Both the position numbers and the translations under genes were made by a program. This document shows positions 21,246 through 59,905 of a stretch of DNA of 64,000 nucleotides, piece after piece. The first letter of the stretch is position 1, and each line of letters opens with the position of its first letter. Where the stretch lies: positions 1 to 64,000 of the forward strand of contig NIVC01002040.1 in assembly GCA_002269645.1 (NCBI GenBank), in the 5' to 3' direction. Source of the stretch: Macrostomum lignano. Lineage: Eukaryota. Below the pieces are notes generated by a model. It saw nothing but the letters and a program-made list of their open reading frames with translations, was not told where the DNA came from and did no database searches.

Positions 21246-21287
<42 letters not shown>

Positions 21288-21304
21288 GGACAGATAGACA
21301 GACG

Positions 21305-21348
<44 letters not shown>

Positions 21349-21551: not shown

Positions 21552-21583
<32 letters not shown>

Positions 21584-27500: not shown

Positions 27501-29763
27501 TAGGCTAGCTTATGAGTCACTTCTTAGGCTAGCTTTTGAGTCACTTTTTAGAGTAGCTTATGAGTCATTTTTAGAGTAGCTTATGAGTCATTTTTAGAGT
27601 AGCTTATGAGTCATTTTTAGAGTAGCTTATGAGTCATTTTTAGAGTAGCTTATGAGTCACTTCTTAGACTAGCTTATGAGTCACTCCTTAGACTAGCTTA
27701 TGAGTCACTCCTTAGGGTAGCTTATGAGTCACTCCTTAGGGTAGCTTATGAGTCACTTCTTAGGGTAGTTTATGAGTCACTTCTTGGGGTAGCTTATGAG
27801 TCACTTCTTAGGGTAGTTTATGAGTGTCTTTTAGACCAGCTTTGAGTTGAGTTATGAGCACCATTCACAGTGAATTTGAACCGTATTTCATCAACACTGA
27901 GACTAGTTTTCATAATTAGAATTAGTTCTTAGCCCTTACTCAAGCTGAGTAGCCAGTTAACCGTGATCAACTCGAACGTAAACAAAGCTAGAAAAGCCAT
28001 CGTAAGACGAAAACATGCGGCCAACAGAAGAAGCCATTGACCTGCTGCCCGGCACTGTTTTTGCCCTAAATTAAAAAGAAAAAACAACAGCTTTCTTTCA
28101 CAGCGAAACATATCGAAGAAAAAAGAAGTCAGCCAACGTTATTTTATAGACATTAATCATATATTCGTTTAGCGATGGAACACCGCTCCTTGACGCCAAC
28201 TCTAATCTCAACATCTATCTCTCATTGACTCCCTCTAAGTTCAACATATATCTCTCATTGACTCCCTCTCTAATTCATACATTTATCTTTCCTTGACAAT
28301 CTAAACTCAAAATCAATCTCCTTGATTCTCTCTAATCTCAACATCTATCTCTCCCTGACACTCTAAACTCAACATCTCTCATTGACTCTCTCTAATCCAA
28401 ACATCCATCTTGACTCTCTATTCTCTAATCTATACATCTATCTGTTATTGACTCTCTTCAATCTCAACATCTATCTCTCATTGACTCCCTCTAATAAATA
28501 CATTTATCTCTCATTGACACTCTAAACTCAACATCTCTCACTGACTCTCTCTAATCCAAACATCCATCTTGACTCTCTATTCTCTAATCTATACATCTAT
28601 CTCTTATTTACTCTCTTCAATTTCAACATCTATCTCTCATTGACTCCCTCTAATAAATACATCTATCTCTCATTGACACGCTCTAATCCATACATTTATC
28701 TCTCCTTGACACTCTAAACTCAACATCTCTCATTGACTCTCTCTAATCCAAACATCTATCTTGACTCTCTAATCTATACATCTATCTCTCATGGACTCTC
28801 TCTAATCTCAACATCTATCCCTCATTGACTCTCTCTAATCTCAACATCTAGATCTATCATGGACTCTCTCTAATCTCAACATCTATCCCTCATTGACTCT
28901 CTCTAATCTCAACATCTAGATCTCTCATTGACTCTCTCTAATCTCAACATCTAGATCTCTCATTGACTCTCTCTAATCTCAACATCTAGATCTCTCATTG
29001 ACTCTCTCTAATCTCAACATACGTCTCTCCCTAAAACTCTGCCCATGATTCTAAATGCATTTACACGTTCCTATCACCGAATTAATCGAAAAGATTAAAA
29101 CTGGGCTTGCACTGGCACCTGCTTAGGTTTTATGAAGCAGATTATAAAGAATTTATCATTTGAGAGACACTAGAGAAGGCCCACTCTCCCGGGACACAAA
29201 GGCAGTTGCAACGTTAATCAGCTTTAAAGCTTCTCGGGGATAAAACGAGAGAGGCTGGGGAAACCCTGTTAAGCCCTCCTTCCCCTGTTCACCCTCCACC
29301 TTCATCAGCAGACTGAGCTCGAATTTCGAGTTTCATAATTTTTCAACTCAGAGGCACCAAGCTGCTCACAGCCGGAAAACTAAAAGTGCAAAATGAAGAT
29401 TGCTAACTGCGCAATAAATTGACAAATCAATGCTAGACATTATGTTAAAGATGCAGAGCACTGCGAGTGAAACCAAAATCTGTAACTTTTTAGGTCGTAA
29501 CTTTTAATTAGCGTTTCTAGTGCGTTCATAACGTGATTGCTTACTGGATAACTGGTGCATGGTTATAATGATTGACTATTGACCAGGACTAAGAGGTAGA
29601 CAGGCAGATACGCAGGCAGACGGAAGACAGAAGAAAAAACAGATAGACAGGCAGACAGACAGACACTTAGACAGACAGATATAAATACAGACACATAGAC
29701 AGACAGACAGACAGACAGGCAGACAGACAGACAGACAGGCAGGCAGACAGACAGACAGACAGG

Positions 29764-29794
<31 letters not shown>

Positions 29795-29796
29795 GC

Positions 29797-29831
<35 letters not shown>

Positions 29832-36368: not shown

Positions 36369-38262
36369 TTAGGCATCACACACTTTGGCTTCTAAATCGA
36401 TCTGCAAGTCTCCCGGACTGGTGGCGGCAGAAGAGGACTGCTGCTGTTGTTGCTGCTCCTGTTTTCCCTCTGCTTCTTGACTGACTGTATAGGAGTTTAG
36501 AGATTCTTGAGCTGTTCGATCAGACGCAGCTGTAGCATTGGTAGGCTGGGCTTCCGGCTGCTCCTCTGCTTTTGACTGGGCAGCAGCAGCAGCAGCAGCA
36601 TCTGCAGCGGAGCTTTGCTGCACAGCTGGAGCACTCGGCGGAGTTGCCTGTCTAGCGGGCGTCGCCTCGTCGACAGTCGGAGCCGACACGGACGAGCCGA
36701 ACATGAATCGTTTTTTTATTGGCCTGCTAGCATCGCCTGAAGCATTATTGCTGCTACTAGAAGAAGCCTGCTGGTCCTGTAAGATTTGCTGTTCGATACT
36801 TTTGTGCAAAGTTTTAGCAACGTCTGACCAGTGCTTGCCTGTTGGCGTGCCCGACTGGCTGCGTGGCGCGGCTGCCGCAGTCGAGCTCGAATCCGAATCG
36901 GCCTTCTCAGCAGCAGCCTGTTGCTGCTCTTCTTTCTTCTTCTGTTGTTGCTGTTGTTTATCTAATTTAAAATCGTCGCAAATTATTTTCTCAATATGAT
37001 CGCCAAATGTGAGCACGCTTAGGCTGCCGGCGGTGCCTGCTGACGAATTGCCAACCGTAGCTGCACTGCTGTTTGCTCTGGGACGGTGTGGCTGTTGTTG
37101 CTGCTGCTGAGATTGTTGCTTCTGCTGCTGTTGCTGCTGCTGCGGAGGCGAATGCAGATTGCTAACAATCTGGTTGTGAATAATAACGTCTATTAATTTG
37201 GCAGCGGTGACAGTTTTCTCAGGCGTAGCGGCTGCTGCTAGCAAAGCTGAGCCACTGCTTGCGGCTGATATCTGTTGTTGCTGCTGCTGCTGTGGCTTCT
37301 CTCTGCTTCTCTCTTGCTCTGTTAAAAATGGGTGCCGTTCAGCGGCAATAGCTGACGAGCTACCAAAACTGGAGCTGCGCCGATGAATACCAGCTGAGTC
37401 GCTAGAGACAAACCCGTTGCCACTGCTGCTGATGCTGCCTGACGCAACAGTAGCTGTTGTATTCGTTTGATAAGATGCCGCTGATGTCTGCTGACGGTGA
37501 TGATGATGATGATGATGATGATGCGGCTGCTGTTGCTGCTGCTGCTGCTGCTGGTGCTGCAGCAATTTAGCGTGTATATCAGCAACAAAATTGATTTGTT
37601 GTTGAACTTGCTGCTGCTGTGACTGACTGTGCTGATGGGAGTGATACGGCTTGAGCTGGCCATGCAGGTGAGGGTGCTTGTGCTGCATAGACTGGGCCAG
37701 AGCGGCCAGCTGCTGCTGCTGCTGTTGTTGCAGCGGCGAAGCAGGCGGCGGCGGAGGCGGCGCCTGAGGCACCAACGGCTTCTTCTGCGGGGCGGCGTGC
37801 GCCGGCGGAGGCATGGCGTCAGGCAGCTGAGGAGGAACCGTTGCGGAAGTAGAGGAAGCTGCAGCAGCAGCGGCCATAGCCTGTCGCTTCTTCATCAGCA
37901 CGTACAACTGGCTGGCCTCCGAGCTCGTGCGAGTCCGCTCGGCGTCGCTAAGCGCTCGATCGCGAAATTTTCGATAGCTTTCAACCTCATCTCGATAAGT
38001 TTGCTCAGCCTTAGCTGCGTAGATGTCAGTCTGGGACATGCCAGCCATGCCCGGGAGCCACGAAGGTGGCGGCTGCGGTGGCGGCGGCAGTGTCGGAGCG
38101 CCATGCTGAGGCAAATGCCTGTGATGAGGCTGAGCCTGTTGCTGTTGCTGCTGCTGCTGCTGCTGCTGAAACTGCTGGGCTTGCAAGAAATTTTCCTGCA
38201 TTATTGCTCTAGTAGATGCGGCAGGCTCCGGATAGACGGGAAGCCTTGGACGATAAAGTTGC

Positions 38263-38305
<43 letters not shown>

Positions 38306-41300
38306 GCTGTTGCTGCCAAGCCGCAGCAGCAGCCGCAGCAGCAAGAAGTTGCTGGTGATGCCGCTGGTCCATAGTAGCCTTGGACAGAGGAGGCGGCAGC
38401 GGCTGCTGCAGATGCTGATGATGCTGCTGAATGACTGGCTCAAATGCGGAATGCCTAATCGAAGGCGATTGAGCCTGCTGATTAATATGAGAATCAAACC
38501 TAGGCTGTTTGGCTAGCGGTTGATGCAGCTGAGGCTGCTGCATTGCAGGATACTCTCGCTTATTAGGCAAATATTCTCTGGACAACTGGTGCTGCTCTTG
38601 CTGTTGTTGCATAATACCCGTCGGCGATGGTATAAAATTCTGTTCAATAGTCATGTGAATCCTGTCGCGAATACACCGCTGAGTCAAAGGCAGCTGCTGC
38701 TTTTGCTGCTGTGTGTGAGACGGCTCCTCCAAAGTGCCAATCGAAGTTCGAACGCGCGGACTGCCGCTAACGCCGCCGCGTGGCAGTTCAATACTACCAT
38801 CGGCCTCGGTCTGCTGATTAGAAGTCTCCTGTTGCTCCTCCTGCTCCTGTCCGTCCATGCTGACATCGTCAAAGTCATCTTCAACTGCAGACTGCTGCTG
38901 CTGCTGCTGAGGCGTTGATTGTTGAGTCTGCTGCTCAGCTTGAGCAGTGCTGCTGCTGCTAGGCCGAACTGGTTGAACACTACCGGCTGCAGATGCTGAT
39001 GATGTTGAAGCTGCAGCAGCAACAGCAGCAGCGGCAGCAGCAGCAGCAGCGGCAGCAGCAGCTCCTTTATTAGCTCTGCGACGAATGTTCTGCTTCTTAA
39101 ACAAAATCTTGTAGCCTTCCTTCTTCTTAGTGAGATAATAGAACTGCACGCATTCGCTAACCGATTTGCCATGCAAATAGGCCGATATAGCGCTAAAGTT
39201 TTTGCCAAACACAAGAAATTTCTCCCGAAATATTTGCCTCTCAGCCTCTGTCCATTTGAATGACAAATCTTGATGACTACTCCAATGCTGGCTGGGGTCA
39301 GTCAGTAGCAAGCCCTGCGTGTTCACGTAGCGCCTAGCGATATCCCACGGTGCTAGAAGCATCGGCGGCAATACCGCCAAGCTTTTCATTCGCTCTTCCT
39401 CTTCTTTCGCCCGTTTAATCAGCTCCATCATATCGGCCACTTCGCCTTCGGTTCTGGCCGTCTGAGCCGGCTGAGCATAGAACCGCTCTATCTTCTCTTT
39501 TTCGTCTCTACTCTTGCGTAGCTCGGGAAAATATCGTTCAAAATAATCGCGCCATTTCGCCTCGCGCTGCTTCTGCTTGCCACTGTTGGCCAGACGCTCC
39601 AGCCGGCGGGTCCAATGCCGCTGCAGATTGTTATAAGAGTCGCGCAGATGACGCTCGCGCCTCTCATTAGCTAACCGGATGCGCCGTAGGTGTCGAATTA
39701 GGCGCGGTTTAAATTCCCGATGCCGAAGCTCCTGATCGCGTATGGCGGCCACATCCGACGGCTGATTATAATAGGGCGGATCCGGCACCGGCTCCGGCCA
39801 CACTTTCCTGTGACTCTGTGCCGCTTTGCGCCGGTTCTCGGCTACGATAGCAGCAAACGGATTCACCAGCCGCTGCTCAAGCTCCTCGTCTTCTCGGCGA
39901 CGGCCCTCTTCGGTTTCGCTTTGACGTACTCGGCTTAATAATTTGTCTCGTTCGGCAGTTTTTGCCAATAGCTGGTCTTGGACACTTTTAATGTCATTTT
40001 CGATGCTGATTAGTCTGTACCCAACCTCGGTTTTCTCTTTCTGGAGACGCTGATCGGCGAGATTCTCCTCAGGTGCTGGGCTGATTGCTTCCACCTGCGG
40101 CAGCAATAGCGGAATGGAGTGGCGGCAACTTTAACTAATACATATAGTGTGCTAGTACTTATGACTTTATCCTCAAAATATAAATAATGTATCGCTAATA
40201 TCATCTACAATTTTATCCCCACATAATTATCCGCTAATATCCATAATTATCCATAGTATCCATAATTATCCATATATATCCATAGTTATCCATAATTATC
40301 CGCTAATATCATCGATAATTTTCCCCCATTGTCATCCAATATTTCATCCCTAATTACGAGTATCATTCAAAATTTATCCCTCAATAACATGCATAATTTA
40401 TCCCAAATATCATCCATAATTTCTCCCGAAATATCATCCATATTGCGAAATATCATCCATAATTTATCCCGAAATATCATCCATAATTTCTCCCGAAATA
40501 TCATCCATAATCTATCCGTGATTATTATGCACAATTCATTTCTTAAAATCCTTGATAATTTAAGTAAAATATATACTCGTATTTCAATTTATCCCAAAAT
40601 TATAATTTATCCTAAATAATACCCATAAGTTATCTTTCAATATGATTCCCATTTTATCGCATTTACCTTGCAAAATTTTATCTAGCAATCAAATTACTTA
40701 ATAACCCTAAAGATTGCAGTCCTCTCTCATGAAATAAAACAATTTGCCAAGCAATCAAGTTTACCTGTGGATGATAAACTTCATTTTTTTGTCTAGCACC
40801 GGCTCCGCTATGCTCGTGCTTCTGCTGTATCAGCTGTATCCTCGGCTTATCTGATTGGCGCCTATCTATTCGATATCGATATGGATCGGGATCGCGATCG
40901 CGACGGCCACTGTTGGAGTCCTGCAGAGTGGCTGCGGCAGCTGCGGTGGGGGCTGTGGCGGCGGCTGCTGTTGCTACTTGGCCAGGTGTTGCTGAAGTTT
41001 TGCATGAAATAAATCAACTAGTCAGCTTGCAACCCAATGATAAACTGCTGGGATGTCAGCTCGAAACCCAATGATAAACTGCTGGGATGTCAGCTCGAAA
41101 CCCAATAATAAACTGCTGGGATGTCAGCTCGCAACCCAATGATAAACTGCTGGGATGTCAGCTTGCAACCCAATGATAAACTGCTGGGATGTCAGCTCGC
41201 AACCCAATGATAAACTGCTGGGATGTCAGCTTGCAACCCAATGATAAACTGCTGGGATGTCAGCTCGCAACCCAATGATAAACTGCTGGGATGTCAGCTT

Positions 41301-44655: not shown

Positions 44656-47004
44656 GGCCTGCAATATTAATTTAGATGATAAGGGATTTAGCCTAAATAA
44701 ATAGGACAATTATAGTTACTTTTACCATTTATCTAAAATTGCATTAACTTTTGCTTAACAGTTTCTTTTATAATTAAGTCACACTTTTGATCAAAAGTAA
44801 GTTGCATGGCCAGTGTAAATCAGGGAGTTGCAATTGATTAGGGGCCTTTTATTAGGGGGCCTAACTAATTGATTACCATAGGTTATTATAAATTATTATA
44901 GGTTAAACAAAAGTCTTGTTGATAGTACCTTTAAGTCTAGACAAGCAAACTACCAACTGGTAAAAATCTTCATTTCAGTTTAACTATGAAACATTAATTG
45001 CCTAGCCACCTTAAAGATTAAAAATTAAAATAATGAAAAAAATTATACTTGCGAAGTAAAACTTCTAGAATCTAGGCTCTATCTAAACATCTCCTGTACT
45101 AAAATCTAAATATACTAAATCTTACTTTCTAAATTCCGACGAGGCCTAAGCTAAGTAGATAGGCCTACTGAAATCTTTATAACTAAGACCGAAACTGACA
45201 TTCATATTTGATATTTGATCTGCAGATCCATGTTAAAGGACGATTAAGGTTAAATTAAGTTTTACTTAATGTTAAACTGTTAAACAAATAAGGTAAAAAT
45301 ATCCCTTAACTTGTCTTTTTTAGCCCTAATGTTAAAGTATTACTGACAAAATATATTTTATAAAAAATATCTTGTTTTGATATCAAATAGTAAATGACTG
45401 GATTTAACTTTTGCTTTTTCTTCGAAATGAGGCCAAACGTCAAAGGGGAGCTTTTCACTTTTCACATTACCAATTCCATAACCAGAATCGATTCGGATCT
45501 TCCAAGAAAAAAAGCAGTATAGGCCTAACTTTTTAACTTTGCTCAATGTTTGACTGCCTTACAGCTTCACTTTGCACAATTTTTCATTTTCTTTTTGGCT
45601 ATTGCCATTCAATAATCACAACTTTAAAGCACTTATATGTTATATCCCTCTAGTTTAGGAGACAAAAAGTTATAATTTACAAATTGGATCTGGTTCTAGA
45701 ACCAGAACAAGCAATATGAAAAGGCCTTAAGAGTTCTCTAGCGACGACTGCAGACTGGCTTAGCAACAGCCACTAGTTAGCTAGTTCTAGTTGACAGGTC
45801 CAGTAGCAGTAGCCTAATTGTATGTACTAGGGTCTAGGGCCTACAGTAACCAAAATAATGTCGAATTAGTTTTTATTTAAAAACTTTTACCAAATTGCCA
45901 AGTGCAAGTAGGGGTCACAAAATCCCATATTCTGTCAATATCCTGGGAATGCTGGGATTAGAAAATGTGTGGTCACTGGTCAGATCGTCTGATTCCATTT
46001 CATTGGATTGGATGACAAAGTAACCAAAAGCAAAGTAGCTTTGAAAAATAATATGATGAAAATATTTAGTTATGCTGGACCTGGATACTTTGTCATTGTT
46101 ACCTGGACACTTTGTCATCCTACAACTTCATATAGATGACGATCTATCCAATATCTCAGAGGGTGGATGACAAAGTGACTTAGTGTGGACACTTTGTCAT
46201 CTATAAAACAAGTTTTCAAAGTTAGAACAGAACAACCCCCATCCCACATCACCCCCAACATGCACATGATTTTTTTATTTTAAGACATCATGTTGACACC
46301 TCCATCATGCACACAATTTTGTTATTTTGAGACATTGTGTTGGCATCTAAGTCCTATCTTTCAACTCTTACAATGAAATCAGTTTTGACATCTCTTTTTG
46401 ACAATTTAGAGTGTAGTGTGAAGCGTGTTCACCTCTGCCCTACTACCCTACCCTCACTTTATCTAAACAAAGCAAGCACAAAAGCACCTCTATATCTGAC
46501 ATGCACCCAACAGGCTCAATTGAGACCTTGTGTTGGCACCTGTTCCTTCAATTCATCTTAGCCCACCCTTGAAGTTTTTATACCTCAACCCTACTATCCT
46601 ACCTCAACCATACATCACTCTGATGTGCACAATTTACGGTGGCCAGGTCAGCCAGCAGTTGCGCATGTATGATTGGAAGCATACAATATATCAAATTCAT
46701 AACACCTCACTTTCTATAAGTAATTTACTAATTGAAAAATACAATAAAGTAGACAATAATTAGTACAGATATTAGTTATATATGATGTAAAATGCTGTTA
46801 AAATGCAAACACTCCCAGCATTTTTTCCTAACATTAGTAATGTATATAAATCTAACTATATAAAAATGTTTACAAAGGTTTTTACTTTTAAAAATTTTTA
46901 GCTGATTACAAAAATTATTATTTCAAGTAATTTATTTAAACTATTGATTACTGAACTCAGACACTATATCTGATTTGCCTAATTTGGCACCCAATGTCTC
47001 AACC

Positions 47005-50000
47005 ATGGGAGACATCAATGACAAGGATGTCATCAACAAAAAAATTTGCATCGCCATGGTTTCTGATTTCTTTTTTCCTAATATGGGTGGTGTTGAGACA
47101 CACATCTACCAGCTAGCCCAGTGCTTAATCAGCTTGGGCCACAGGGTTATTGTGATCACCCATGCCTATGGAAAAAATAGTGAAAGGCGAGGAGTGCGAT
47201 GGATGATGAATGGTCTGAAGGTTGGTAACTTTTAGCTGTGCTTAAAATATTTTCGAATCATTTGTTGGTCATTTATATGTGGCTGATTAATTACAATCAG
47301 ATCTACAGTCCCTGTCTCTGGGGATTTTGGTGATTTCCTTTCACTAGTTGCTCATTAGTTTGTCATTGATCATTCCCTTGTGTCATTAGTTGGTCATTAA
47401 TCATTCCCTGTGTCATTAGTTAGTCATTCATCATTCCCTGTGTCATTAGTTGGTCATTAATCATTCCCTGTGTCATTAGTTGGTCATTAATCATTCCCTG
47501 TGTCATTAGTTAGTCATTCATCATTCCCTGTGTCATTAGTTGGTCATTAATCATTCCCTGTGTCATTAGTTGGTCATTAATCATTCCCTGTGTCATTAGT
47601 TAGTCATTCATCATTCCCTGTGTCATTAGTTGGTCATTAATCATTCCCTGTGTCATTAGTTAGTCATTCATCATTCCCTGTGTCATTAGTTAGTCATCAA
47701 TCATTCCCTGTGTCATTAGTTGGTCATTAATCATTCTTAGTCACTCGTTTATCATCAATCACAGGTGTACTATTTGCCATTCCTGCCCTTCTACAACCAG
47801 TGCGTTTTGCCTACGGTTCTGCTAACGCTACCTCTAGTCAGACAGGTGCTCATTCGCGAACGAGTCGGCCTGGTCCACGGCCACTCGGCCTTCAGCGCTC
47901 TGGCCAACCAGACTCTGCTGCACGCCCGCACACTCGGCCTTCCCACCGTCTTCACCGATCATTCGCTGTTCGGCTTTGCCGATGTCAGCTCCATCCTGAC
48001 TAACAAACTGCTCAATGGAATCTTAAGCGATACCTGTCACGTGATTTGCGTATCGCATACCAGGTAAAGATCTTTTTTGATAACTTGTTCAGTTCTGTTC
48101 ACATTTAATCTCTCAAATCATCAGTTGCTGGGCCAGCCTCCCAGATACTCAGTTACTGGGGCAGCCTCTCAGATCCTCAGTTGCTGGGCCAGCCTCCCAG
48201 ATCCCCACTTGCTGGGCCAGCCTCCCAGATCCCCAGTTGCTGGGCCAGCCTCCCAGATCCCCAGTTGCTGGACCAGCCTCCCAGATCCCCAGTTGCTGGG
48301 CCAGCCTCTCAGATCCCCAGTTGCTGGACCAGCCTCCCAGATCCCCAGTTGCTGGGCCAGCCTCTCAGATCCTCAGATGCTGGGCCAGCCTCTCAGATCC
48401 TCAGTTGCTAGGCCAGCCTCTCAGATCCTCAGATGCTGGGCCAGCCTCTCAGATCCTCAGTTGCTGGGCCAGCCTCCCAGATCCCCAGTTGCTGGGCCAG
48501 CCTCCCAGATCCTCAGTTGCTGGGCCAGCCTCCCAGATCCTCAGTTGCTGGGCCAGTCTCCCAGATCCTCAGATGCTGGGCCAGTCTCCCAGATCCTCAG
48601 TTGCTGGGCCAGTCTCCCAGATCCTCAGTTGCTGGGCCAGCCTCCCAGATCCCCAGTTGCTGGGCCAGCCTCCCAGATCCTCAGTTGCTGGGCCAGTCTC
48701 CCAGATCCTCAGTTGCTGGGCCAGTCTCCCAGATCCTCAGATGCTGGGCCAGCTTCCTCTACTACTGGCCTTAAGATATCCTCTCGTCGCTACTGACAAT
48801 TCTTTTACTTCGAGTACGAAATAATTTTTGGGCTCGCATTTGCATTTCTCTTTTACCTTACTTCCAGTAGTATTCTCGGTGAATTCTTCAAAAAATGACC
48901 TATTAAAACAAGTTTGCACTATCATTTCAGCAAAGAAAATACGGCACTACGCGCAATGCTGTGCCCCAGTCGCATCTCTGTCATTCCCAACGCTATCGAT
49001 GCTGATGTGTTCACGCCGGACCCGGATCAGCGAGATACCAATTACAGTGCGTTTATCTTATGTTGGAGTAGATAGATGGACAGACAGACACGGAGGCAGT
49101 AAAATAGACAGACAGACAGACATAGATACATGCAAATCACCCGCAGTAACCATAGTGGTGCTGAGCCGCCTTGTGTACCGCAAAGGCGTGGACCTGCTGT
49201 CCCGGGTCATCCCGATCATTTGCCAGCGTCACTCTGACGTTCGATTTTTAATCGGCGGCGACGGGCCGAAACGGCTGGTGCTGGAGGAGCTGCGGGAGCG
49301 GCTGGGCATTCAGGACCGGGTGCTGCTGCAGGGCCAGGTGCCCCATCATCAGGTGAGGTAGCAAATTGATGCCCGTAAACAGGGGGTATATGGGGAAGGC
49401 ACAGGTGCAGGGGGTATGGGGAAGGCACAGGTGCAGGGGGTATGGGGAAGACACAAATGAGTATGGGTAAGGCACAGGGTATGGGGAAAGCCACAGGGGG
49501 TATGGGGAAGGCACAAGGGTATGGGGAAAGCCACAGGGGGTATGGGGAAGGCACAGGGTGTATGGGGAAGGCCCAAGGGGTATGGGGAAGGCACAAATGG
49601 GTATAGAGAAGGAACAAAAAGTATGGGGAAGGCACAGTGGGTATGGTGAAGGCAAAGGGGTATTGGGAGGGCCCAGGGGGTATGGGGAAGGCACAGGGGG
49701 TATTGTGGGCAACTCAACCTTCCAGTAATTACACTAATTCAAGATGTTCACCAGCTCAGTGACCCGATAATCCCCCAAATTTTTCAGGTGCGAGCCCACC
49801 TGGTCAGAGGCGACATCTTTCTAAATACGTCGCTAACCGAAGCGTTCTGCATGGCCATCCTGGAAGGTGCGAGCTGCGGCCTGTCGGTGGTCAGCACCAA
49901 TGTTGGCGGCATCCCCGAGGTTCTGCCGTCTGACCTGATCCGGCTAGCTGAGCCAGATGCGACCTCATTGGCTGACGGTCTTGAACAGGCCATCGCCGAG

Positions 50001-51143
50001 TGTCGCCAAGGCCCCGACGGTCGCCGGCAGCCCGAGGACTTTCACCGGCTGCACGAGTCGGTTCGCGATATTTACACGTGGCGCAATGTCGCCCTGAGGA
50101 CTGAGTGCGTCTACAGGCGGGTACTCGACGCCGGGGGTCCCGAGCCGACCAGACATAGGCTGGCCAACTATCTCACAGCTTGCGGTCCCGTTGGTGGCAA
50201 AATTTTCCTCATCTTTGCCCTGCTTAATCTGGCGCTTGTCAGGCTGCTGCAGCTGCTGCAACCTGCCGAGGTGGGTCAGGTGTCTGGATAGTTTGTGTCA
50301 GGTGTCTGTACAGTTTGTGTCAGGTGTCTGGATAGTTTGTGTCAGGTTTTTGGATAGTTTGTGTCAGGTATCTGTAAAGTTTGTGTCAGGTGTCCATATA
50401 GTTTGTGTCAGGTATCTGTAAAGTTTGTGTCAGGTGTCTGTATAGTTTGTGTCAGGTATCTGGATAGTTTGCGTCAGGTGTTTGTACAGTTTGTGTCAGG
50501 TGTCCATATAGTTTGTGTCAGGTGTTTGTACAGTTTGTGTCAGGTGTTCATATAGTTTGTGTCAGGTATCTGTAAAGTTTGTGTCAGGTGTCTGTATAGT
50601 TAGTGTCAGGTATCTGGATAGTTTGCGTCAGGTGTTTGTACAGTTTGTGTCAGGTGTTTGTATAGTTTGTGTCAGGTATCTGTAAAGTTTGTGTCAGGTG
50701 TATGTATAGTTTGTGTCAGGTGTCTGTAAAGTTTGTGTCAGGTGTCTGTATAGTTTGTGTCAGGTGTATGTATAGTTTGTGTCAGGTTTCTGTAAAGTTT
50801 GTGTCAGGTGTCCGTATAGTTTGTGTCAGGTGTCTGTAAAGTTTGTGTCAGGTGTCTGTAAAGTTTGTGTCAGGTGTCTGTATAGTTTGTGTCAGGTTTC
50901 TGTATAGTTTGTATCAGGTGTCCATATAGTTTGGGTCAGGTGTCCGTATAGTTTGTATCAGGTGTCCATATAGTTTGGGTCAGGTGTCTGTATAGTTCGT
51001 GTCAGGCGTTCAGTCAGTTGCTTAGGTGTTCTGCATGCAATCACAATTCAATTCCCACGCACCCATTCCAGCGCATTGAGCCGGGCATTGTGCCGGATCG
51101 CAGTAAGCTACGCAACCGGAGCATCCCCTGCGAAGAACAATAA
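47005..51143 (+). CDS. PIGA: Phosphatidylinositol N-acetylglucosaminyltransferase subunit A (GPI anchor biosynthesis, GT4 family). Exons: 47005-47220, 47765-48063, 48931-49046, 49147-49352, 49788-50270, 51072-51143; 463 aa
   Basis: GT-AG introns with phases 0,2,1,0,0. Motifs: [51 protein letters not shown]|[76 protein letters not shown]. The final small exon is less certain. Confidence 0.95.
47355..47740. repeat. 30-bp minisatellite TCATTCCCTGTGTCATTAGTTGGTCATTAA, about 12 copies (PIG-A intron 1)
   Basis: Period 30 seen directly. Confidence 0.95.
48120..48752. repeat. 28-bp minisatellite CAGTTGCTGGGCCAGCCTCCCAGATCCT, about 22 copies (PIG-A intron 2)
   Basis: Period 28; produces the three overlapping pseudo-ORFs at 48077-48824. 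Confidence 0.96.
49378..49710. repeat. G-rich minisatellite of about 20 bp, GGGGTATGGGGAAGGCACAG (PIG-A intron 4)
   Basis: TATGGGGAA at 49501, 49520, 49541 and onward. Confidence 0.92.
50274..51005. repeat. 22-bp minisatellite GTCAGGTGTCTGTATAGTTTGT, about 33 copies, starting 3 nt after the PIG-A exon 5 donor
   Basis: GTCAGG at 50341, 50363 and onward. Confidence 0.96.
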
Positions 51144-51419: not shown

Positions 51420-51436
51420 GTCTGTCTGTCTGTCTG

Positions 51437-51507
<71 letters not shown>

Positions 51508-51541
51508 TTTTCTTGTCTGTCTGTCTGTCTGTCTGTCTTTT

Positions 51542-51613
<72 letters not shown>

Positions 51614-51616
51614 TTT

Positions 51617-51660
<44 letters not shown>

Positions 51661-51663
51661 TTT

Positions 51664-51715
<52 letters not shown>

Positions 51716-51870
51716 GCTTGTCTGTCTGTCTGTCTGTCTGTCTTTTTCTTGTCTGTCTGTCTGTCTGTCTGTCTTTTTCTTGTCTGTCTGTCTGTCTGTC
51801 TGCTTGTCTGTCTGTCTCTCTGTCTGCTTGCCTTTTTGTTTGTTTGTTTGTGTATTTCTGTCTTTCTGTC
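51420..51870. repeat. (CTGT)n microsatellite with recurrent TTTTTCTT interruptions, downstream of the PIG-A stop
   Basis: Direct reading. Confidence 0.95.
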
Positions 51871-53723: not shown

Positions 53724-56700
53724 ATGACAACAGCTCCTAGTGCGAGTACGAGACCAGCTTCTTCAACTTACGGTCTGTCCGACTCTCCCGGAAGCAGCAG
53801 TTCGCTGTTTCTGTCACTCTCCGGAGCGTAAGTTGCAATTCTAAAATTCTTTATTTTAAATGCACTATAGGCTAGGCCTAGTTTTAAGATATTCAACATC
53901 GTTGATTTAGTACCGTGTTAGAATTCTAAAAAATTATATTTCTTGTAGGTTGTAGCTAATCTTTTTTTAAATGATCTTTTAGCTAATAAGTTCCTAATCC
54001 TAAGTTACTTCCTTATTTACATTGTTGAGCTTTGGGTTAGGGTTTACAGCCTCATTGACCCTTTCTACAGATCCCCATTGACACATTTTACAGTAGAGTC
54101 CAGATCCTCATTTACCCATTCAGCAATGAAGTCCAGATCCTCATTGACCCATTCAGCAATGAAGTCCAGATCCTCATTGACTCATTCTACAGCAGAGTCC
54201 AGATCCTCATTGACTCATTCTACAGCAGAGTCCAGATCCTCATTGACTCATTCTACAGCAGAGTCCAGATCATTATTGACTCATTCTACAGCAGAGTCCA
54301 GATCATTATTGACTCATTCTACAGCAGAGTCCAGATCCTCATTGACTCATTCTACAGCAGAGTCCAGATCCTCACTCAGTAAGAGTCGATCCTCAGTGAA
54401 CTGTCGCTCTTGTTGTCTTGCTGTAATAAAACTTAATTCCCAAATCCCCACCCGCTGCAGGGCATCGCCATATTCCTCGAGCGTATCTTGCGGCAATTAC
54501 TCGTTGAGCAATTCAAATTTACCTGAGTCGCCTTGTTATAAGCAGCTAACGCTGTACCACCAGCAGCAGCAACAGCAACAACAATGTCAGCAACAATTTA
54601 ACATTGAGTTGGAAGACTGGCAGTCACATTTCTTGCAGTTTCAGCAGCAGAATCCTAATCAGCATGTTCAGTCATGCTATCAGGCTCCGTCTCAACAGCA
54701 GGTTCTGCAAGTATGCGGCGGTCAGGTAATCATTACTGCTTTATATTTCTTCTGAATCACTTCTTCTGGTTGAACATGTACATGTATCAGATAACATAAT
54801 GCGGCGGAGAGGCGACTGTTGCGTCACAAGCGGTCACGTGACTTGTAGAAATCGTAAGAGTCGTCCAAAAATCCTTGTTTTGACGCTTAACTTTTGCTAG
54901 AGACTACAGTTTACAGCGACTCTAGCGCGCTATTTTACCTCTGTTTTCTGCAACAGCTCTGGGGCGACGCAAGTGAAGTTATTCTTTAACGCCTCTTGGC
55001 CTCTAGGTACCTTTTTCATTGGGATGCTTCAGCCACCCCCACTGATCCTTCAGCTACCCCCACTGTTCATTCAGCTACCCCCACTGATCCTTCAGCTACC
55101 CCACTGATCCTTCAGCTACCCCCACTGATCCTTCAGCTACCCCCACTGATCCTTCAGCCACCCCCACTGATCATTCAGCCACCCCCACTGATCATTCAGC
55201 CACCCCCACTGATCCTTCAGCCACCCCCACTGATCATTCAGCCACCCCCACTGATCATTCAGCCACCCCACTGATCATTCAGCCACCCCCACTGATCATT
55301 CAGCCACCCCCACTGATCATTCAGCCACCCCCACTGATCCTTCAGCTACCCCACTGATCCTTCAGCTACCCCACTGATCCTTCAGCCACCCCCACTGATC
55401 CTTCAGCTACCCCACTGATCCTTCAGCCACCCCCACTGATCCTTCAGCCACCCCCACTGATCCTTCAGCCACCCCCACTGATCCTTCAGCTACTCCACTG
55501 ATCATTCAGCCACCCCCACTGATCCTTCAGCTACCCCACTGATCCTTCAGCTACCCCACTGATCCTTCAGCCACCCCCACTGATCCTTCAGCTACCCCAC
55601 TGATCCTTCAGCCACCCCCACTGATCCTTCAGCCACCCCCACTGATCATTCAGCCACCCCCACTGATCATTCAGCCACCCCCACTGATCATTCAGCCACC
55701 CCACTGATCATTCAGCCACCCCCACTGATCATTCAGCCACCCCCACTGATCATTCAGCCACCCCCACTGATCATTCAGCCACCCCACTGATCATTCAGCT
55801 ACCCCACTGATCCTTCAGCCACCCCCACTGATCATTCAGCCACCCCCACTGATCATTCAGCCACCCCACTGATCATTCAGCCACCCCACTGATCATTCAG
55901 CCACCCCCACTGATCATTCAGCCACCCCCACTGATCATTCAGCCACCCCCACTGATCATTCAGCCACCCCACTGATCATTCAGCCACCCCCACTGATCAT
56001 TCAGCCACCCCACTGATCCTTCAGCTACCCCACTGATCCTTCAGCCACCCCCACTGATCCTTCAGCTACCCCACTGATCCTTCAGCCACCCCCACTGATC
56101 CTTCAGCCACCCCCACTGATCCTTCAGCCACCCCCACTGATCCTTCAGCTACTCCACTGATCATTCAGCCACCCCCACTGATCCTTCAGCTACCCCACTG
56201 ATCCTTCAGCTACCCCACTGATCCTTCAGCCACCCCCACTGATCCTTCAGCTACCCCACTGATCCTTCAGCCACCCCCACTGATCCTTCAGCCACCCCCA
56301 CTGATCATTCAGCCACCCCCACTGATCATTCAGCCACCCCCACTGATCATTCAGCCACCCCACTGATCATTCAGCCACCCCCACTGATCATTCAGCCACC
56401 CCCACTGATCATTCAGCCACCCCCACTGATCATTCAGCCACCCCACTGATCATTCAGCTACCCCACTGATCCTTCAGCCACCCCCACTGATCATTCAGCC
56501 ACCCCCACTGATCATTCAGCCACCCCCACTGATCATTCAGCCACCCCACTGATCATTCAGCCACCCCCACTGATCATTCAGCCACCCCCACTGATCATTC
56601 AGCCACCCCCACTGATCATTCAGCCACCCCACTGATCATTCAGCTACCCCACTGATCCTTCAGCCACCCCCACTGATCATTCAGCCACCCCACTGATCAT

Positions 56701-59700
56701 TCAGCCACCCCACTGATCATTCAGCTACCCCACTGATCCTTCAGCCACCCCCACCGATCCTTCAGCTACCCCACCGATCCTTCAGCTACCCCCACTGATC
56801 CTTCAGCTACCCCACCGATCCTTCAGCTACCCCACCGATCCTTCAGCCACCCGTCAATCACTCACAGACACTTGACAGTCACTATCGAATTACAATGCCC
56901 CCTCTAAGCAACTCTATCAAAATGGAATTGCTACTCAGAACGACCCGACTATCTGGGGCTGCATGGACGAGCTGGCTCAGCCAGAGGACCACCCGGACAG
57001 CCCCGACAAAGAACGACAGCAGCAGCAGCCGCTAGCCTCATTCGAGTCCTACAATGATCTGCCCAATAACTGCGGCTTCACGGTTCGGCCGCAGACTCTG
57101 ACCGAATGCCGCGGTGACAGTCTGCACAATCGAATTTTTGAGCGCGGCGAAAACTACTTTGGCGTGAGTTTAATCCGGATTGAACTTGGTACAGTAGTCT
57201 ATCTTAATGGATCGCCATTATAAACTCGAAATATCATAACTCCGAAAACTAAAATAGCGTTGGGCGTTGCTAGCACTTTCGGGTTTGTAATGCCCCCCGT
57301 TTAAATTAGGGTCTTAGCCTTACCTGAAACTTTACCCTAACATAAACCCCTATTCTAATCCCTAACCCCATCCTAAACCCTAACCTAAACCCCCAACGTA
57401 CCCTAAATCGTTGTGACGTTGTCAGTCAAAAAATTGTCGAACTTCCCATTTCACGAGCTATCTTAACTCAAGCAATACTTTTGTATTAAGAATTAGTTAA
57501 AGAATATTTTTTCCTTAATAAGAGCCTGAATCTTAGAAATCTCATTATTGAGCGCGGTTAATCTTAAAAAAATCCTTAGTGAATGTTATTTTTTAGAAAT
57601 ATCTTTAATTATAAAGCTGGTTCTTAGAAATATCTTTTTAAAAACAGGTTTTTTTAGAAATATCGTTTGTGTAGTGAAATTGCTTTCTTAGAAATGGTTT
57701 CTTAGAAATATCTTTATTGAAAGTGGTTTCTTAGAAATGCCTTTAATAAAAGTAGTTTCCTAGAAATACCCTTGGTGAAAGTGCTTTCTTAGAAATATCC
57801 GCAAATAAAAATTATTGCTTCCAAACTTCCAAACCTTTTAGGATTATTCTTTCTGATAAAAATAGAAAGTGGGATGTTCCTGATAAACACTGTTTGGCGT
57901 CCCTGAAATTAGCGAATAAAAATTGCTTTCTGAGCTATTTCTTAGAATTGCCCTTTTAAACTCTCGCATCTCCCAGTTCAGCGCCGAAGACCGTCAACTG
58001 TTGGAGTCGGCAATCCTGCCCGATACTCAGCCAGCCGGTTCCGACTCTCCCCCCGCCGAGGCCGCCGCCGCCGCTACCGCTTCGCCTAATCCTCTGCTGA
58101 CGCATTTCCCCCGCCGGAAACTGGACGCCGACCTTCGCGTGCCGGCCACCGTCTACCTGGAGGACAAGAGCGGCAAGCGGCATCTAAATCTGGACATCAG
58201 CAGCGAGGTGCCAGTCAGCAAGCTGCTGATTCGTTGCCAGGCCATCGGTTTATTGCCTGGCGACTATCCGCAGCCCTGCTCAACTTGCTCCGTGTCTAAT
58301 GGCCAATTGTTGGTTAGCATCGCCAGTCACAGTTTGGAGGGATTGGTCCACTTGGATCCGGACAGACAGCAGAGCTGCCTGTACTGCACTGGGCTGCCAG
58401 AGGCTGGCAGAATGTGGCTTACGCTGCGCTATAACTGCTGCCAGGTATTTTTGGGGAGGGAGTTGGCGGTGGTTTTTGAGGATTTAGATTATATGCGCGC
58501 CCAGATTTGACTGTATGCACACCCGTTATGTACACCCTGATATGTACACCCTGATATGTACACCCTGATATGTACAACCTGTTATATACACCCGTTATGT
58601 ACATCCTGTTATGTACACCTTGATATGTACATCCTGATATGTACATCCTGATATGTACATCCTGATATGTACAACCTGTTATGTACACCCTGATATGTAC
58701 ATCCTGATATGTACATCCTGATATGTACAACCTGTTATGTACACCCTGATATGTACAACCTGATATGTACACCCTGATATGTACACCCTGATATGTACAA
58801 CCTGTTATATACACCCGTTATGTACATCCTGTTATGTACAACCTGTTATGTACACCCTGATATGTACATCCTGATATGTACATCCTGATATGTACACCCT
58901 GATATGTACACCCTGATATGTACAACCTGATATGTACACCCTGATATGTACACCCTGATATGTACATTCTGATATGTACATCCTAATATGTACACCCTGG
59001 TGTGTACACCTGTTATGAACACCGGCTAAAAACACCCTGATTTACATTCTGATATGTACATCCTAATTTTTGTACACCTGTTATGAACACCGGCTAAAAA
59101 CACCCTGATATGTACATCCTGATATGTACAACGTGATATGTACACTCCGATGCGTGCCAAGCAAAGAGAAAGTAGCAGAAAAATGTAGAGCAGCAAAGCC
59201 ATGAATCGCCATGGATCTCTCTAACCCCACCAGGACCACATGCGCAACAACCAGCGACTCAGCCACCTGGCCCTGGCCAATCTGATCACCGTGATTGAAG
59301 CATTCGACCAGCTCGGCTGTCTGATTGGCCGGGCCAGCTTTCGAGTCCGGGTGGTGGCCTCGCCTGCCCGCGACCTGCTCCGGTTTCTCACCAGCCAGTT
59401 GACCCCAGTCCAGACCGGCTGCACCATCGGCCAATGCACCCACCTGGCTGCCCGCTGGAAGGCCGAACGATTCCGCCAGCTGCCAGCTGCCGATCTTGGC
59501 TGGTGCCTTCGCCAGCTCCGGTTCAAGGAGTCGCTGCGCGCTGAGCTGGAGGCTCAGCTGGAGCAGCCGCAGCCGACTGCAACAAAGCGCCAGCGGCAGG
59601 AGTCCGATCTAAATCCTCTGAGCGAAGACGAGCCACAGCCCAGCAGCCCAGAAGGCTTGCAAATTCTACCCGACGGCAGTATGCTAGTTCGATCGTCTGA

Positions 59701-59905
59701 TGGCGCCAAAATGGCGCGTATTCGCGACGCTATTAACGCCATATTGGCTTCGGAGAGTGGCGCCGAGAAGTCTGTCGCAGTGCGGCCAACTCTTAATTTG
59801 CGCCCGATGCAGCAGGCCGCGCAGCCAGTGCAGCAGGTGATCCATGCTGCGCCCCCGACTTTTCAACCGATTTTGTTAATTCGGCCGTATTGTCAGTTTA
59901 AGTGA
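53724..59905 (+). CDS. Highly divergent p53/p63/p73-family transcription factor. Exons: 53724-53827, 54461-54725, 56879-57163, 57977-58444, 59234-59905; about 597 aa. Symbol left empty because orthology within the family is unresolved
   Basis: GT-AG introns with phases 2,0,0,0. The spliced product contains [13 protein letters not shown] (cf. p63 SNTDYPG..F.V), KLLIRCQAI (cf. TRVRAMAI), QPCSTC (cf. RRCPHH), [17 protein letters not shown]|DHM (cf. [22 protein letters not shown]), and [31 protein letters not shown] (cf. [31 protein letters not shown]). These are followed by an NLS-like KRQRQ and a tetramerisation-like KMARIRDAI. Exons 1-2 are low-complexity and supported only by splice sites and phase. 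Confidence 0.8.
54045..54375. repeat. 33-bp minisatellite CCTCATTGACTCATTCTACAGCAGAGTCCAGAT, about 10 copies (p53-like intron 1)
   Basis: CTCATTC at 54181, 54214 and onward. Confidence 0.93.
55028..56852. repeat. 20/21-bp minisatellite CAGCCACCCC(C)ACTGATC(A/C)TT, about 88 copies (p53-like intron 2)
   Basis: Direct reading; includes a 659-bp higher-order duplication. Confidence 0.97.
57530..57800. repeat. Degenerate repeat built on TTCTTAGAAAT (p53-like intron 3)
   Basis: About 8 recurrences of CTTAGAAAT at irregular spacing. Confidence 0.65.
58513..59145. repeat. 14-bp minisatellite GATATGTACACCCT (p53-like intron 4)
   Basis: Period 14 seen directly. Confidence 0.95.

What the first reader, a model, noticed from the sequence alone, without database searches (positions are those of the whole stretch)
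58277..59239. Apparent reciprocal swap of zinc ligands in the p53-like domain (His179 to Cys, Cys242 to His)
Known: p53 binds Zn through C176, H179, C238 and C242. Seen: the L2 site reads P-C-S-T-C (58274-58288; C-x2-C instead of C-x2-H). The L3 site, assembled across intron 4, reads YN-C-C-Q|D-H-M (C-x3-H-M instead of C-x3-C-M). Inference: compensatory exchange keeps a Cys3His sphere with the His moved to the other loop. I do not recall this arrangement in any p53-family protein. It also independently supports the splice junction.
Basis: partly seen in the sequence, partly recalled or inferred. Interest (0 to 1): 0.75.

Follow-up and report, generated by a model that had tools for sequence, protein, structure and literature searches.

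The report
Divergent flatworm p53, non-canonical zinc ligands
A very divergent p53-like gene of the flatworm Macrostomum lignano lacks the family's standard zinc-binding signature and has other cysteines plus one histidine in the two zinc loops, but sequence alone cannot show that this is the tidy ligand swap proposed.

Summary
The sequence observation is correct. P-C-S-T-C lies at 58274-58288. Y-N-C-C-Q|D-H-M spans a GT-AG, phase-0 intron (58445-59233). The same junction is in the RNA-seq-guided GenBank model PAA61369.1 of Macrostomum lignano, annotated only as 'hypothetical protein'.

The gene is under purifying selection: 17 synonymous against 6-7 non-synonymous differences to two other genomic copies, pN/pS about 0.12.

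Similarity to p53 is real but weak. There is no Pfam P53 hit. Only the L3-to-H2 third of the domain aligns: BLASTP 4e-9 pairwise, PDB-wide E about 1e-3, hhalign 1.5-3e-4. The Arg273 and Arg280 equivalents are firmly placed.

The canonical C-x2-H and C-x3-C signature is absent under every alignment. L2 has no histidine, and L3 has only the adjacent C352/C353 followed by H356.

- **Cys242 to His:** supported by motif spacing (C-x3-H-M-x4-R, chance about 1.6e-5) and by a low-confidence maximum-accuracy alignment.
- **His179 to Cys:** not robust. Most alignments put C285 (LLIRC against VVRRC) on Cys176 and Ile288 on His179, leaving PCSTC inside an L2 insertion.

No orthologues and no usable structure model could be obtained. 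Verdict: partly supported, and a possible new variant of a known kind.

The parts
53724..59905 (+). Five-exon gene for a 577-aa p53-like protein. Exons: 53724-53827, 54461-54725, 56939-57163, 57977-58444, 59234-59905, including the TGA stop. Equals GenBank PAA61369.1 / BOX15_Mlig020042g1, 'hypothetical protein', Macrostomum lignano.
   Evidence: The spliced translation is identical to P0001. All four introns are GT-AG. The contig is NIVC01002040.1.
57977..58444 (+). Exon 4 (residues 199-354). Contains a low-complexity insertion, the presumed strands S3-S8, loop L2 and the first half of loop L3.
58223..58237 (+). L281-L282-I283-R284-C285 ('LLIRC'). This is the rival, and by alignment the better, equivalent of human V172-V173-R174-R175-C176. 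I288 (58244-58246) then falls on His179.
   Evidence: Posterior for C285 on C176 is 0.40-0.79 against human p53, p63, p73 and fly p53. hhalign per-column confidence is about 0.6. MAFFT G-INS-i agrees.
58274..58288 (+). P298-C299-S300-T301-C302, the C-x2-C knuckle the finding is about. It is either the L2 ligand pair (reader) or part of an 11-residue L2 insertion that could donate one ligand.
   Evidence: Sequence. Alignment partners are unstable: C299 on C176 scores 0.27 only when the alignment is trimmed to start at residue 267 and 0.10 or less otherwise. MAFFT L-INS-i and E-INS-i put C302 on C176. hhalign puts C302 on C182.
58430..58444 (+). Y350-N351-C352-C353-Q354: the end of strand S8 and the start of L3. 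Y350 on human Y234 is well anchored. C352 or C353 is the candidate equivalent of Cys238.
   Evidence: Posterior for Y350 on Y234 is 0.82; for Cys238, C353 scores 0.26, C352 0.21 and R358 0.19. hhalign puts C353 on C238.
58445..59233 (+). Intron 4, phase 0, GTATTT...ACCAG. Positions 58514-59145 are about 45 copies of the 14-bp unit TATGTACACCCTGA.
   Evidence: The same intron is 403 and 404 bp in the two other copies.
59234..59257 (+). D355-H356-M357-R358-N359-N360-Q361-R362, the second half of the L3 motif. H356 is the candidate equivalent of Cys242, M357 of Met243, and R362 of the minor-groove Arg248.
   Evidence: The motif spacing is identical to human p53, with chance 1.6e-5. The hhalign MAC alignment agrees at low confidence. 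BLASTP and HMMER instead align R358 and R362 to C238 and C242.
59339..59374 (+). F390-R-V-R393-V-V-A396-S-P398-A-R400-D401, equivalent to human F270-E-V-R273-V-C-A276-C-P278-G-R280-D281 (strand S10 and the start of helix H2). The DNA-backbone and guanine-contact arginines are conserved.
   Evidence: Posterior 0.99 for R393 on R273 and for R400 on R280. This stretch is the core of every BLASTP, HMMER and hhalign match.
58376..58387 (+). C332-L-Y-C335, a second C-x2-C in the presumed strand S7. Not part of the proposed site. It shows that CxxC is not rare in this Cys-rich domain.

Best explanation
The gene encodes a functional, highly diverged p53-family transcription factor of Macrostomum lignano. 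Its DNA-reading end (S10/H2, with the Arg273 and Arg280 equivalents) is conserved, but its zinc-binding signature is non-canonical.

The most likely homologies are: R284-C285 on Arg175-Cys176 (retained); I288 on His179 (the histidine is lost); C352 or C353 on Cys238 (retained); H356 on Cys242 (Cys replaced by His); M357 on Met243; R362 on Arg248.

I infer that a structural zinc ion still ties L2 to L3. It would use only cysteines from L2 (C285 and/or one of C299 and C302 from the PCSTC knuckle, which sits in an L2 insertion), together with Cys and His356 from L3. That is again a Cys3His or Cys4-type sphere, with the histidine moved to L3.

Shown: the gene model, the selective constraint, the local homology to p53, the absence of the canonical signature, and the availability of the alternative residues. 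Inferred: that zinc is bound at all, and which four residues bind it.
For: - **Gene and junction:**, and the RNA-seq-guided annotation.
- **Purifying selection:** 17 synonymous against 6-7 non-synonymous differences to the two other copies, pN/pS 0.11-0.13, binomial p = 5e-7. In the DBD the count is 10 synonymous against 0-1 non-synonymous. Introns differ far more than exons.
- **Homology to p53:** phmmer against the PDB returned p53 core domains in all 60 hits listed (of 94 reported), best E = 8.7e-4. BLASTP against the human DBD gave 42.7 bits, E = 4e-9, 38% identity over residues 339-401. hhalign gave E = 1.5e-4 to 2.9e-4, probability 40-52%.
- **DNA-contact residues:** R393 on R273 and R400 on R280, posterior 0.99.
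- **No histidine in L2:** the only histidines in residues 250-410 are 267, 316, 323, 356 and 365, so none lies in L2 (273-308) under any alignment.
- **L3 spacing:** C-x3-H-M-x4-R has human p53's spacing, chance 1.6e-5.
- **C285 on C176:** posterior 0.40-0.79; hhalign confidence about 0.6.
Against: - Pfam P53 (PF00870) does not match even at E <= 10.
- Only about a third of the domain aligns significantly.
- The L3 columns have posteriors of 0.1-0.26, and the default BLASTP, HMMER and hhalign alignments put arginines on C238 and C242.
- With I288 on His179, only three homologous ligand positions remain. The fourth ligand is a guess.
- No structure model is available (pLDDT 36 and 34).
- No orthologues are available to test co-conservation.
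- There is no biochemical evidence of zinc binding.
Confidence: 0.5

Rival explanations
1. PCSTC is the positional equivalent of C176-x2-H179 and C352-x3-H356 of C238-x3-C242, so His179->Cys and Cys242->His are a reciprocal, compensating exchange, and the site is C299, C302, C352, H356. 'LLIRCQAI' is then strand S4 (human RVRAMAIY), and L2 is about 11 residues shorter than in human p53.
For: This ligand set reproduces p53's two-plus-two architecture with the same spacers (x2 and x3). The chance of both patterns occurring in the two loops is 0.0014. 'LLIRCQAIG' aligns acceptably with 'RVRAMAIY', and MAFFT L-INS-i and E-INS-i choose that pairing. C299 on C176 is the top partner (0.27) when the alignment starts at residue 267. 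The L3 half is backed by the motif spacing and the hhalign MAC alignment.
Against: With more N-terminal sequence included, C299 on C176 falls to 0.10 or less, and C302 on H179 to 0.07 or less (0.012). hhalign puts PCSTC in an insertion. The MAFFT modes that choose 'LLIRCQAIG' as S4 align C302, not C299, with C176. No Arg precedes C299, whereas the family has [RK]-C176 and the window has R284-C285. Only 6 residues would link C302 to strand S5, against 15 in human p53. CxxC occurs elsewhere in the domain (C332/C335).
Confidence: 0.22
2. The zinc site has been lost. The domain holds L2 and L3 together by other means, for example hydrophobic packing of I288, L290 and L291, and the scattered Cys and His residues reflect a Cys-rich composition rather than a metal site.
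For: The canonical signature is absent. A hydrophobic residue sits on His179 in the best-supported L2 alignment. The default alignments put Arg on both L3 cysteines. The domain is 3.9% Cys, so C-x2-[CH] or C-x3-[CH] each arise by chance at about 4% per loop. The Pfam model fails, as expected if its most heavily weighted columns are missing.
Against: R284-C285 retains the Arg175-Cys176 dipeptide. C-x3-H-M-x4-R keeps the exact L3 spacing (p = 1.6e-5). Five Cys and one His are concentrated in the two loops that form the site in every solved family member. The DBD is under strong purifying selection. The literature describes the zinc ligands as strictly conserved and needed for L2/L3 integrity (PMC8901663).
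Confidence: 0.23
3. The resemblance to p53 is coincidental. The protein is an unrelated, lineage-specific protein, so any talk of zinc-ligand homology is moot.
For: There is no Pfam hit. The exhaustive phmmer search of 1.84 billion representatives found no relative at E <= 1e-3. hhalign probability is only 40-52%. The N-terminal two-thirds of the putative DBD show no significant similarity.
Against: In the PDB-wide search all 60 listed hits (of 94 reported) are p53 core domains, best E = 8.7e-4. There is 38% identity over 63 residues, covering the family's most diagnostic stretch (G-x-L-[LI]-G-R-x-S-F-x-V-R-V-x-A-x-P-x-R-D), with both DNA-contact arginines in register. Weaker matches are collinear across S3-S8.
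Confidence: 0.05

Closest known systems
Human p53/p63/p73 DNA-binding domains (Pfam PF00870; e.g. PDB 2XWR, 7Z71, 5KBD)
   Same: L3-S9-S10-H2 is collinear at 38% identity. The equivalents of G262, L264-G266-R267, S269, F270, V272, R273, V274, A276, P278, R280 and D281 are conserved. A hydrophobic-hydrophobic-R-C motif matches V-V-[RK]-R-C176. The L3 spacing C-x3-X-M-x4-R is the same. The domain order is also similar: a Q-rich/acidic N-terminus, the DBD, then a basic KRQRQ patch.
   Different: There is no Pfam match. There is no His at or near position 179. The L3 C-x3-C is replaced by CC-x2-H. L3 is 4 residues longer. A low-complexity insertion of about 55-60 residues lies between S2' and S3. 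Arg249 and Arg282 are not conserved. No tetramerisation or SAM domain is detectable.
Drosophila melanogaster p53 (Q9N6D8)
   Same: A divergent invertebrate member. 'VVRCQ' against 'LIRCQ' is the best local L2 match, with posterior 0.79 for C285 on its Cys176 equivalent. L3 length varies in the fly protein too.
   Different: The fly protein keeps C-x2-H and C-x3-C (VVRCQNH; CQNSC) and is recognisable as p53, with 27% identity to human in alignment A2. The M. lignano protein keeps neither signature.
Flatworm p53 homologues: Smed-p53, and Schistosoma mansoni p53-1 (Smp_139530) and p53-2 (Smp_136160)
   Same: Same phylum. These also lack recognisable TAD, tetramerisation and SAM domains (PMC9478680). 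A p53-type motif marks epidermal-lineage chromatin in three flatworms (PMC11398382), so a p53-type DNA binder is expected in this clade.
   Different: Those proteins carry a Pfam PF00870 domain; this one does not. Their sequences could not be retrieved here, so orthology and their own zinc ligands are untested. It is unknown whether M. lignano has a second, canonical p53.
Caenorhabditis elegans CEP-1
   Same: The classic example of a p53 DBD so diverged that sequence alignment misplaces the L2 zinc ligands. A ClustalW table shows Asn and Leu at positions 176 and 179 (PMC4323202).
   Different: From my own memory of the crystal structure (Huyen et al. 2004), which I did not check here, CEP-1 keeps a Cys-His-Cys-Cys site. 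It serves as a warning about alignment-based ligand calls, not as a precedent for a swap.

Membership tests
p53 family DNA-binding domain (Pfam PF00870) | Match to the Pfam P53 profile at or above the gathering score | tested here: not met
   No P53 hit even at E <= 10 for the whole protein or for the isolated core. The precomputed Pfam field is also empty.
p53 family DNA-binding domain (Pfam PF00870) | Significant sequence similarity to solved p53-family core domains | tested here: met
   phmmer against the PDB: all 60 listed hits (of 94 reported) are p53 core domains, best E = 8.7e-4 at 21.6 bits. BLASTP against the human DBD: 42.7 bits, E = 4e-9 pairwise. hhalign against a p53/p63/p73/Dmp53 profile: E = 1.5e-4 to 2.9e-4, probability 40-52%. 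The match is marginal and limited to the L3-to-H2 third.
p53 family DNA-binding domain (Pfam PF00870) | Zinc ligand signature: C-x2-H in L2 and C-x3-C in L3 (Cys176, His179, Cys238, Cys242), described as strictly conserved (PMC8901663) | tested here: not met
   There is no His between residues 268 and 315, and the only L3 cysteines are the adjacent C352 and C353. Alternatives present: R-C285, C299-x2-C302, and C352-x3-H356 or C353-x2-H356.
p53 family DNA-binding domain (Pfam PF00870) | DNA-contact residues of S10/H2 (Arg273, Ala276, Arg280) in register | tested here: met
   R393, A396 and R400 (with P398 and D401). Posterior 0.99 for both arginines. Cys277 is Ser here.
p53 family DNA-binding domain (Pfam PF00870) | Minor-groove Arg248 and structural Arg249 in L3 | tested here: inconclusive
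   R362 falls on Arg248 in the motif-based and hhalign MAC registers, but L368 does in the BLASTP and HMMER register. Posteriors are 0.17 or less. The residue on Arg249 is Leu or Ala in either register.
p53 family DNA-binding domain (Pfam PF00870) | Immunoglobulin-like beta-sandwich with L2 and L3 bridged by zinc (three-dimensional fold) | tested here: inconclusive
   Two AlphaFold2 single-sequence runs gave mean pLDDT 36.2 and 33.7. Foldseek on such a model gave only noise. A deep alignment could not be built.
p53 family (whole protein) | C-terminal oligomerisation domain | tested here: not met
   phmmer of residues 409-577 against the PDB finds no p53, p63, p73 or CEP-1 oligomerisation domain, and there is no Pfam hit. 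Known flatworm p53s also lack a recognisable one, so this weighs little.
p53 family (whole protein) | Orthologues or intermediate sequences linking it to canonical members, with conserved ligand residues | not testable with these tools
   Only three 99%-identical M. lignano copies were found. The exhaustive phmmer search found no other relative and the metagenome scan found none.

The most novel reading that the evidence does not exclude
Macrostomum lignano carries a constrained p53-family transcription factor that Pfam does not detect, and its structural zinc site has been rebuilt. This would be the first p53-family member with a non-canonical zinc sphere. It would show that the four residues described as 'strictly conserved' can be changed without loss of function.
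Probability: 0.3. Interest if true: 0.55.

Novelty: new variant of a known kind. Interest (0 to 1): 0.4.

Why it matters
The four zinc ligands are among the most conserved residues of the p53 family, and the literature describes them as strictly conserved (PMC8901663). Zinc loss or mis-ligation is a main route to p53 misfolding in cancer.

A natural, selectively maintained family member with a different ligand set would be a useful comparison for three questions:
- how much the L2/L3 metal site can be changed;
- which intermediate states (Cys4, Cys2His2) are viable;
- how metallochaperone or stabiliser strategies depend on site geometry.

It would also add a p53-like gene to a regeneration and stem-cell model in which no p53 has been described (no papers found). 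Flatworm p53s are reported to control stem-cell and epidermal lineages rather than genotoxic stress (PMC9478680).

Its weight is limited because it is a single lineage, no structure or biochemistry exists, and the key alignment is uncertain.

Tried and rejected
1. **Pfam on the whole protein, on three fragments and on the older model P0004.** No P53 hit. The only hits were noise: HTH_51 at E 0.19 and DUF2357 at E 0.2.
2. **Homologue search of 5.8 billion proteins.** It returned only the protein's own 90% cluster.
3. **Exhaustive phmmer of 1.84 billion representatives.** It found only the protein itself plus P0005. P0005 is a 7871-aa repeat protein whose repeat unit weakly resembles the Ala/Pro-rich insertion. 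I rejected it as a chance match multiplied by 12 repeat copies.
4. **Metagenome scan with six peptide patterns.** No relative.
5. **AlphaFold2 on residues 154-465 and 250-410 without an alignment.** pLDDT 36.2 and 33.7, unusable. Foldseek on the second model gave only noise, with the best E at 0.46.
6. **C-terminal 169 residues against the PDB.** No oligomerisation domain.
7. **Using the three genomic copies for co-conservation.** They are 99% identical and invariant at every candidate ligand, so they carry no information on that point. They were useful only for the selection test.
8. **Intron position as independent support.** Intron 4 (between Q354 and D355) does not correspond to a human TP53 intron. 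This rests on my memory of the human exon boundaries at codons 224/225 and 261/262 and was not tested here, so it neither helps nor hurts.
9. **Generic alignment scoring of the L3 registers.** Without gap costs the scores are 37 and 40. Generic scoring cannot decide the register.
10. **Literature.** No paper mentions this locus or an M. lignano p53.
Full report
**What the window is.** The window is the first 64 kb of contig NIVC01002040.1 of the Macrostomum lignano (free-living flatworm) assembly Mlig_3_7. It is dense with satellite and minisatellite arrays. On the + strand lies a five-exon gene: 53724-53827, 54461-54725, 56939-57163, 57977-58444 and 59234-59905. All introns are GT-AG. The spliced translation is identical, residue for residue, to GenBank PAA61369.1 (BOX15_Mlig020042g1, 577 aa, 'hypothetical protein'). 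That annotation was made from an RNA-seq-guided transcriptome assembly (PMC5730564). No paper in the library mentions the locus or an M. lignano p53.

**The observation.** It is correct to the base. P298-C299-S300-T301-C302 is encoded at 58274-58288. Y350-N351-C352-C353-Q354 ends exon 4 at 58444, and D355-H356-M357 opens exon 5 at 59234. Intron 4 (58445-59233) is phase 0 and mostly a 14-bp tandem array. The same junction and flanking residues are found in two other genomic copies, where the intron is only 403-404 bp. The junction therefore stands on its own evidence.

**Is the gene functional?** Yes, as far as sequence can show. Against the two other copies, the window copy has 17 synonymous and 6-7 non-synonymous differences. 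That gives pS 0.041, pN about 0.005, pN/pS 0.11-0.13, and a binomial p of 5e-7 against neutrality. Inside the DNA-binding region the count is 10 synonymous against 0-1 non-synonymous. Introns are far more diverged than exons.

**Is it a p53-type domain?** Yes, but only just detectable.
- Pfam's P53 model does not match even at E <= 10.
- An exhaustive phmmer search of 1.84 billion representative proteins finds no relative at E <= 1e-3 apart from a spurious repeat protein.
- Against all PDB sequences, all 60 hits listed (of 94 reported) are p53 core domains, best E = 8.7e-4.
- BLASTP against the human DBD gives 42.7 bits, E = 4e-9 for the pair, with 38% identity over residues 339-401 against human 222-281.
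- hhalign against a profile of human p53, p63, p73 and fly p53 gives E = 1.5e-4 to 2.9e-4 and probability 40-52%.

The matched stretch is the family's most diagnostic one...[21 protein letters not shown] against ...[21 protein letters not shown]. In a pair-HMM posterior, R393 falls on Arg273 and R400 on Arg280 with probability 0.99. I rate homology at about 0.95. This is a diverged relative of the family, not a Pfam-defined member.

**The zinc ligands: what holds under every alignment.** The only histidines in residues 250-410 are 267, 316, 323, 356 and 365. None lies in the L2 region (about 273-308), whichever alignment is used. The only cysteines in L3 are the adjacent C352 and C353, so C-x3-C cannot exist there; H356 lies at +4 from C352 and +3 from C353. 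The canonical Cys-His-Cys-Cys signature, which the literature describes as strictly conserved (PMC8901663), is therefore absent. Five Cys and one His (C285, C299, C302, C352, C353, H356) are concentrated in the two loops that build the site in all solved relatives.

**The L3 half of the claim.**
- BLASTP, HMMER and default hhalign all open one 4-residue gap after Y350-N351. This puts R358 and R362 on Cys238 and Cys242.
It scores 10 against 22 under BLOSUM62 with gap costs 11/1, but 40 against 37 on substitutions alone.
- Posteriors are flat. For Cys238: C353 0.26, C352 0.21, R358 0.19. For Cys242: R362 0.17, C353 0.15, H356 0.14.
C352-x3-H356-M357-x4-R362 reproduces the human spacing C238-x3-C242-M243-x4-R248 exactly, which arises by chance in a loop of this length and composition with p = 1.6e-5. 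The pattern was chosen after seeing the data, which costs perhaps a factor of ten.
- In addition, hhalign's maximum-accuracy alignment puts H356 on C242, M357 on M243 and R362 on R248. It uses C353 rather than C352 for C238, at per-column confidence of only 0.1-0.2.

I accept Cys242 to His as the more likely reading, at about 0.6.

**The L2 half of the claim.** This part is not robust.
- When the alignment is forced to begin at residue 267, C299 is the best partner of Cys176, at 0.27.
- When the upstream strand-like segment 250-266 is included, C285 takes over. Its posterior is 0.40, 0.46, 0.54 and 0.79 against human p53, p63, p73 and fly p53, with C299 at 0.10 or less and C302 on His179 at 0.07 or less.
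- The local match is L-L-I-R-C-Q against V-V-R-R-C-P (human) and V-V-R-C-Q (fly), so the Arg175-Cys176 dipeptide is kept.
- hhalign MAC agrees at confidence about 0.6. It places I288 on His179 and treats L290-S300 as an 11-residue insertion, with C302 opposite human Cys182.
- MAFFT gives C302 on C176 with L-INS-i and E-INS-i, and C285 on C176 with G-INS-i.

That makes three different answers from standard methods. A published ClustalW table that misplaces the L2 ligands of C. elegans CEP-1 shows how unreliable such calls are in diverged members (PMC4323202).

**Most likely mechanism.** This section is inference. The protein is a sequence-specific DNA binder of the p53 type, with the backbone and guanine contacts of S10/H2 intact. 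L2 and L3 are probably still clamped by one structural zinc ion. Its ligands would be cysteines only from L2 (C285, with or without C299 or C302 from the inserted knuckle), plus C352 or C353 and H356 from L3. Either version gives a Cys3His or Cys4-like sphere with the histidine moved to L3. An evolutionary path through a Cys4 or Cys2His2 intermediate never needs a zinc-free state. The rival that zinc binding has been lost, with I288, L290 and L291 packing in place of the metal, cannot be excluded; I put it at about 0.23.

**What could not be done.** The two tests that would settle the question were out of reach. Orthologues: the only relatives retrievable were three 99%-identical copies from the same genome, which are invariant at all candidate ligands. 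Further searches timed out and exhausted the cap, and a metagenome scan found nothing. Structure: without an alignment, AlphaFold2 gave pLDDT 36 and 34, and Foldseek on such a model gave noise.

**Comparison and novelty.** The closest known relatives are the p53/p63/p73 core domains. Within flatworms they are Smed-p53 and schistosome p53-1 and p53-2, which, unlike this protein, carry a Pfam P53 domain (PMC9478680). A preprint on three flatworms reports a p53-type motif as a marker of epidermal-lineage chromatin (PMC11398382), so a p53-type binder is expected in the clade. Whether this gene is that factor, and whether M. lignano has a second, canonical p53, is unknown. If zinc binding with the altered ligand set is confirmed, this is a new variant of a known kind. 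I found no report of a p53-family member with a non-canonical zinc sphere.

**Verdict.** The loss of the canonical signature is solid and the L3 Cys-to-His change is plausible. The L2 His-to-Cys change 'at the same position' is doubtful.

Noticed in passing
window 1-18112: One uninterrupted 18.1-kb satellite at the contig start: 22-bp unit AATCGCCCCAAACCTCAGTAAG, about 807 copies, 97% matches. Its base composition is strongly strand-asymmetric (GC skew about -0.48, AT skew +0.45).
   Followed up: no
window 54068-54374, 55028-56852, 57676-57797, 58514-59145; L002 6590-6992; L003 7425-7828: Every intron of the p53-like gene carries its own minisatellite (33-bp, 21-bp, 29-bp and 14-bp units). The intron 4 array differs in copy number between gene copies: the intron is 789 bp here and 403-404 bp in the two other copies. 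The exon borders are unchanged.
   Followed up: partly
window 36372-40130, minus strand: A 1253-aa uninterrupted open frame that is very Gln/Ala-rich and has one Myb/SANT domain (PF00249, E = 1.1e-6). It looks like an NCoR/SMRTER-type co-repressor exon.
   Followed up: partly
window 46948-50288, plus strand (array at 48110-48757): A PIG-A (GPI N-acetylglucosaminyltransferase) gene lies upstream of the p53-like gene. One of its introns holds a 28-bp x 23 array that is open in all three forward frames, which could mislead ORF-based gene callers.
   Followed up: partly
window 58376-58387 and 59420-59443: The same protein has further Cys clusters: C332-x2-C335 in the presumed strand S7, and C417-x4-C422-x-H424 just after the H2-like helix. 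They might form a second metal site. They also show that CxxC is over-represented in this protein (2 seen against about 0.4 expected).
   Followed up: no
L002 (NIVC01002972.1) and L003 (NIVC01001843.1) against window 53724-59905: The window copy is the outlier of the three genomic copies. Its pS is 0.041 to each of the other two, which differ from each other by pS 0.005. This fits the known duplicated karyotype of the DV1 line: one older duplicate plus a recent one or an allele.
   Followed up: partly
protein P0004 (UniRef A0A1I8I2E8), equivalent to window exons 2-5: An older, truncated and locally frameshifted model of this gene is named 'Rep-A_N domain-containing protein' in UniRef. A Pfam scan finds no such domain, so the name looks spurious.
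   Followed up: yes
window 54600-54650 (exon 2, residues about 81-95): An acidic-hydrophobic stretch, [15 protein letters not shown], follows a poly-Q run in the N-terminal region. It could be a transactivation motif. It does not have the p53 F-x3-W-x2-L spacing.
   Followed up: no
window 20884-21626, 29598-29831, 51420-51826: Long (AGAC)n / (GTCT)n microsatellites, 59-186 copies each, recur in both orientations across the window.
   Followed up: no
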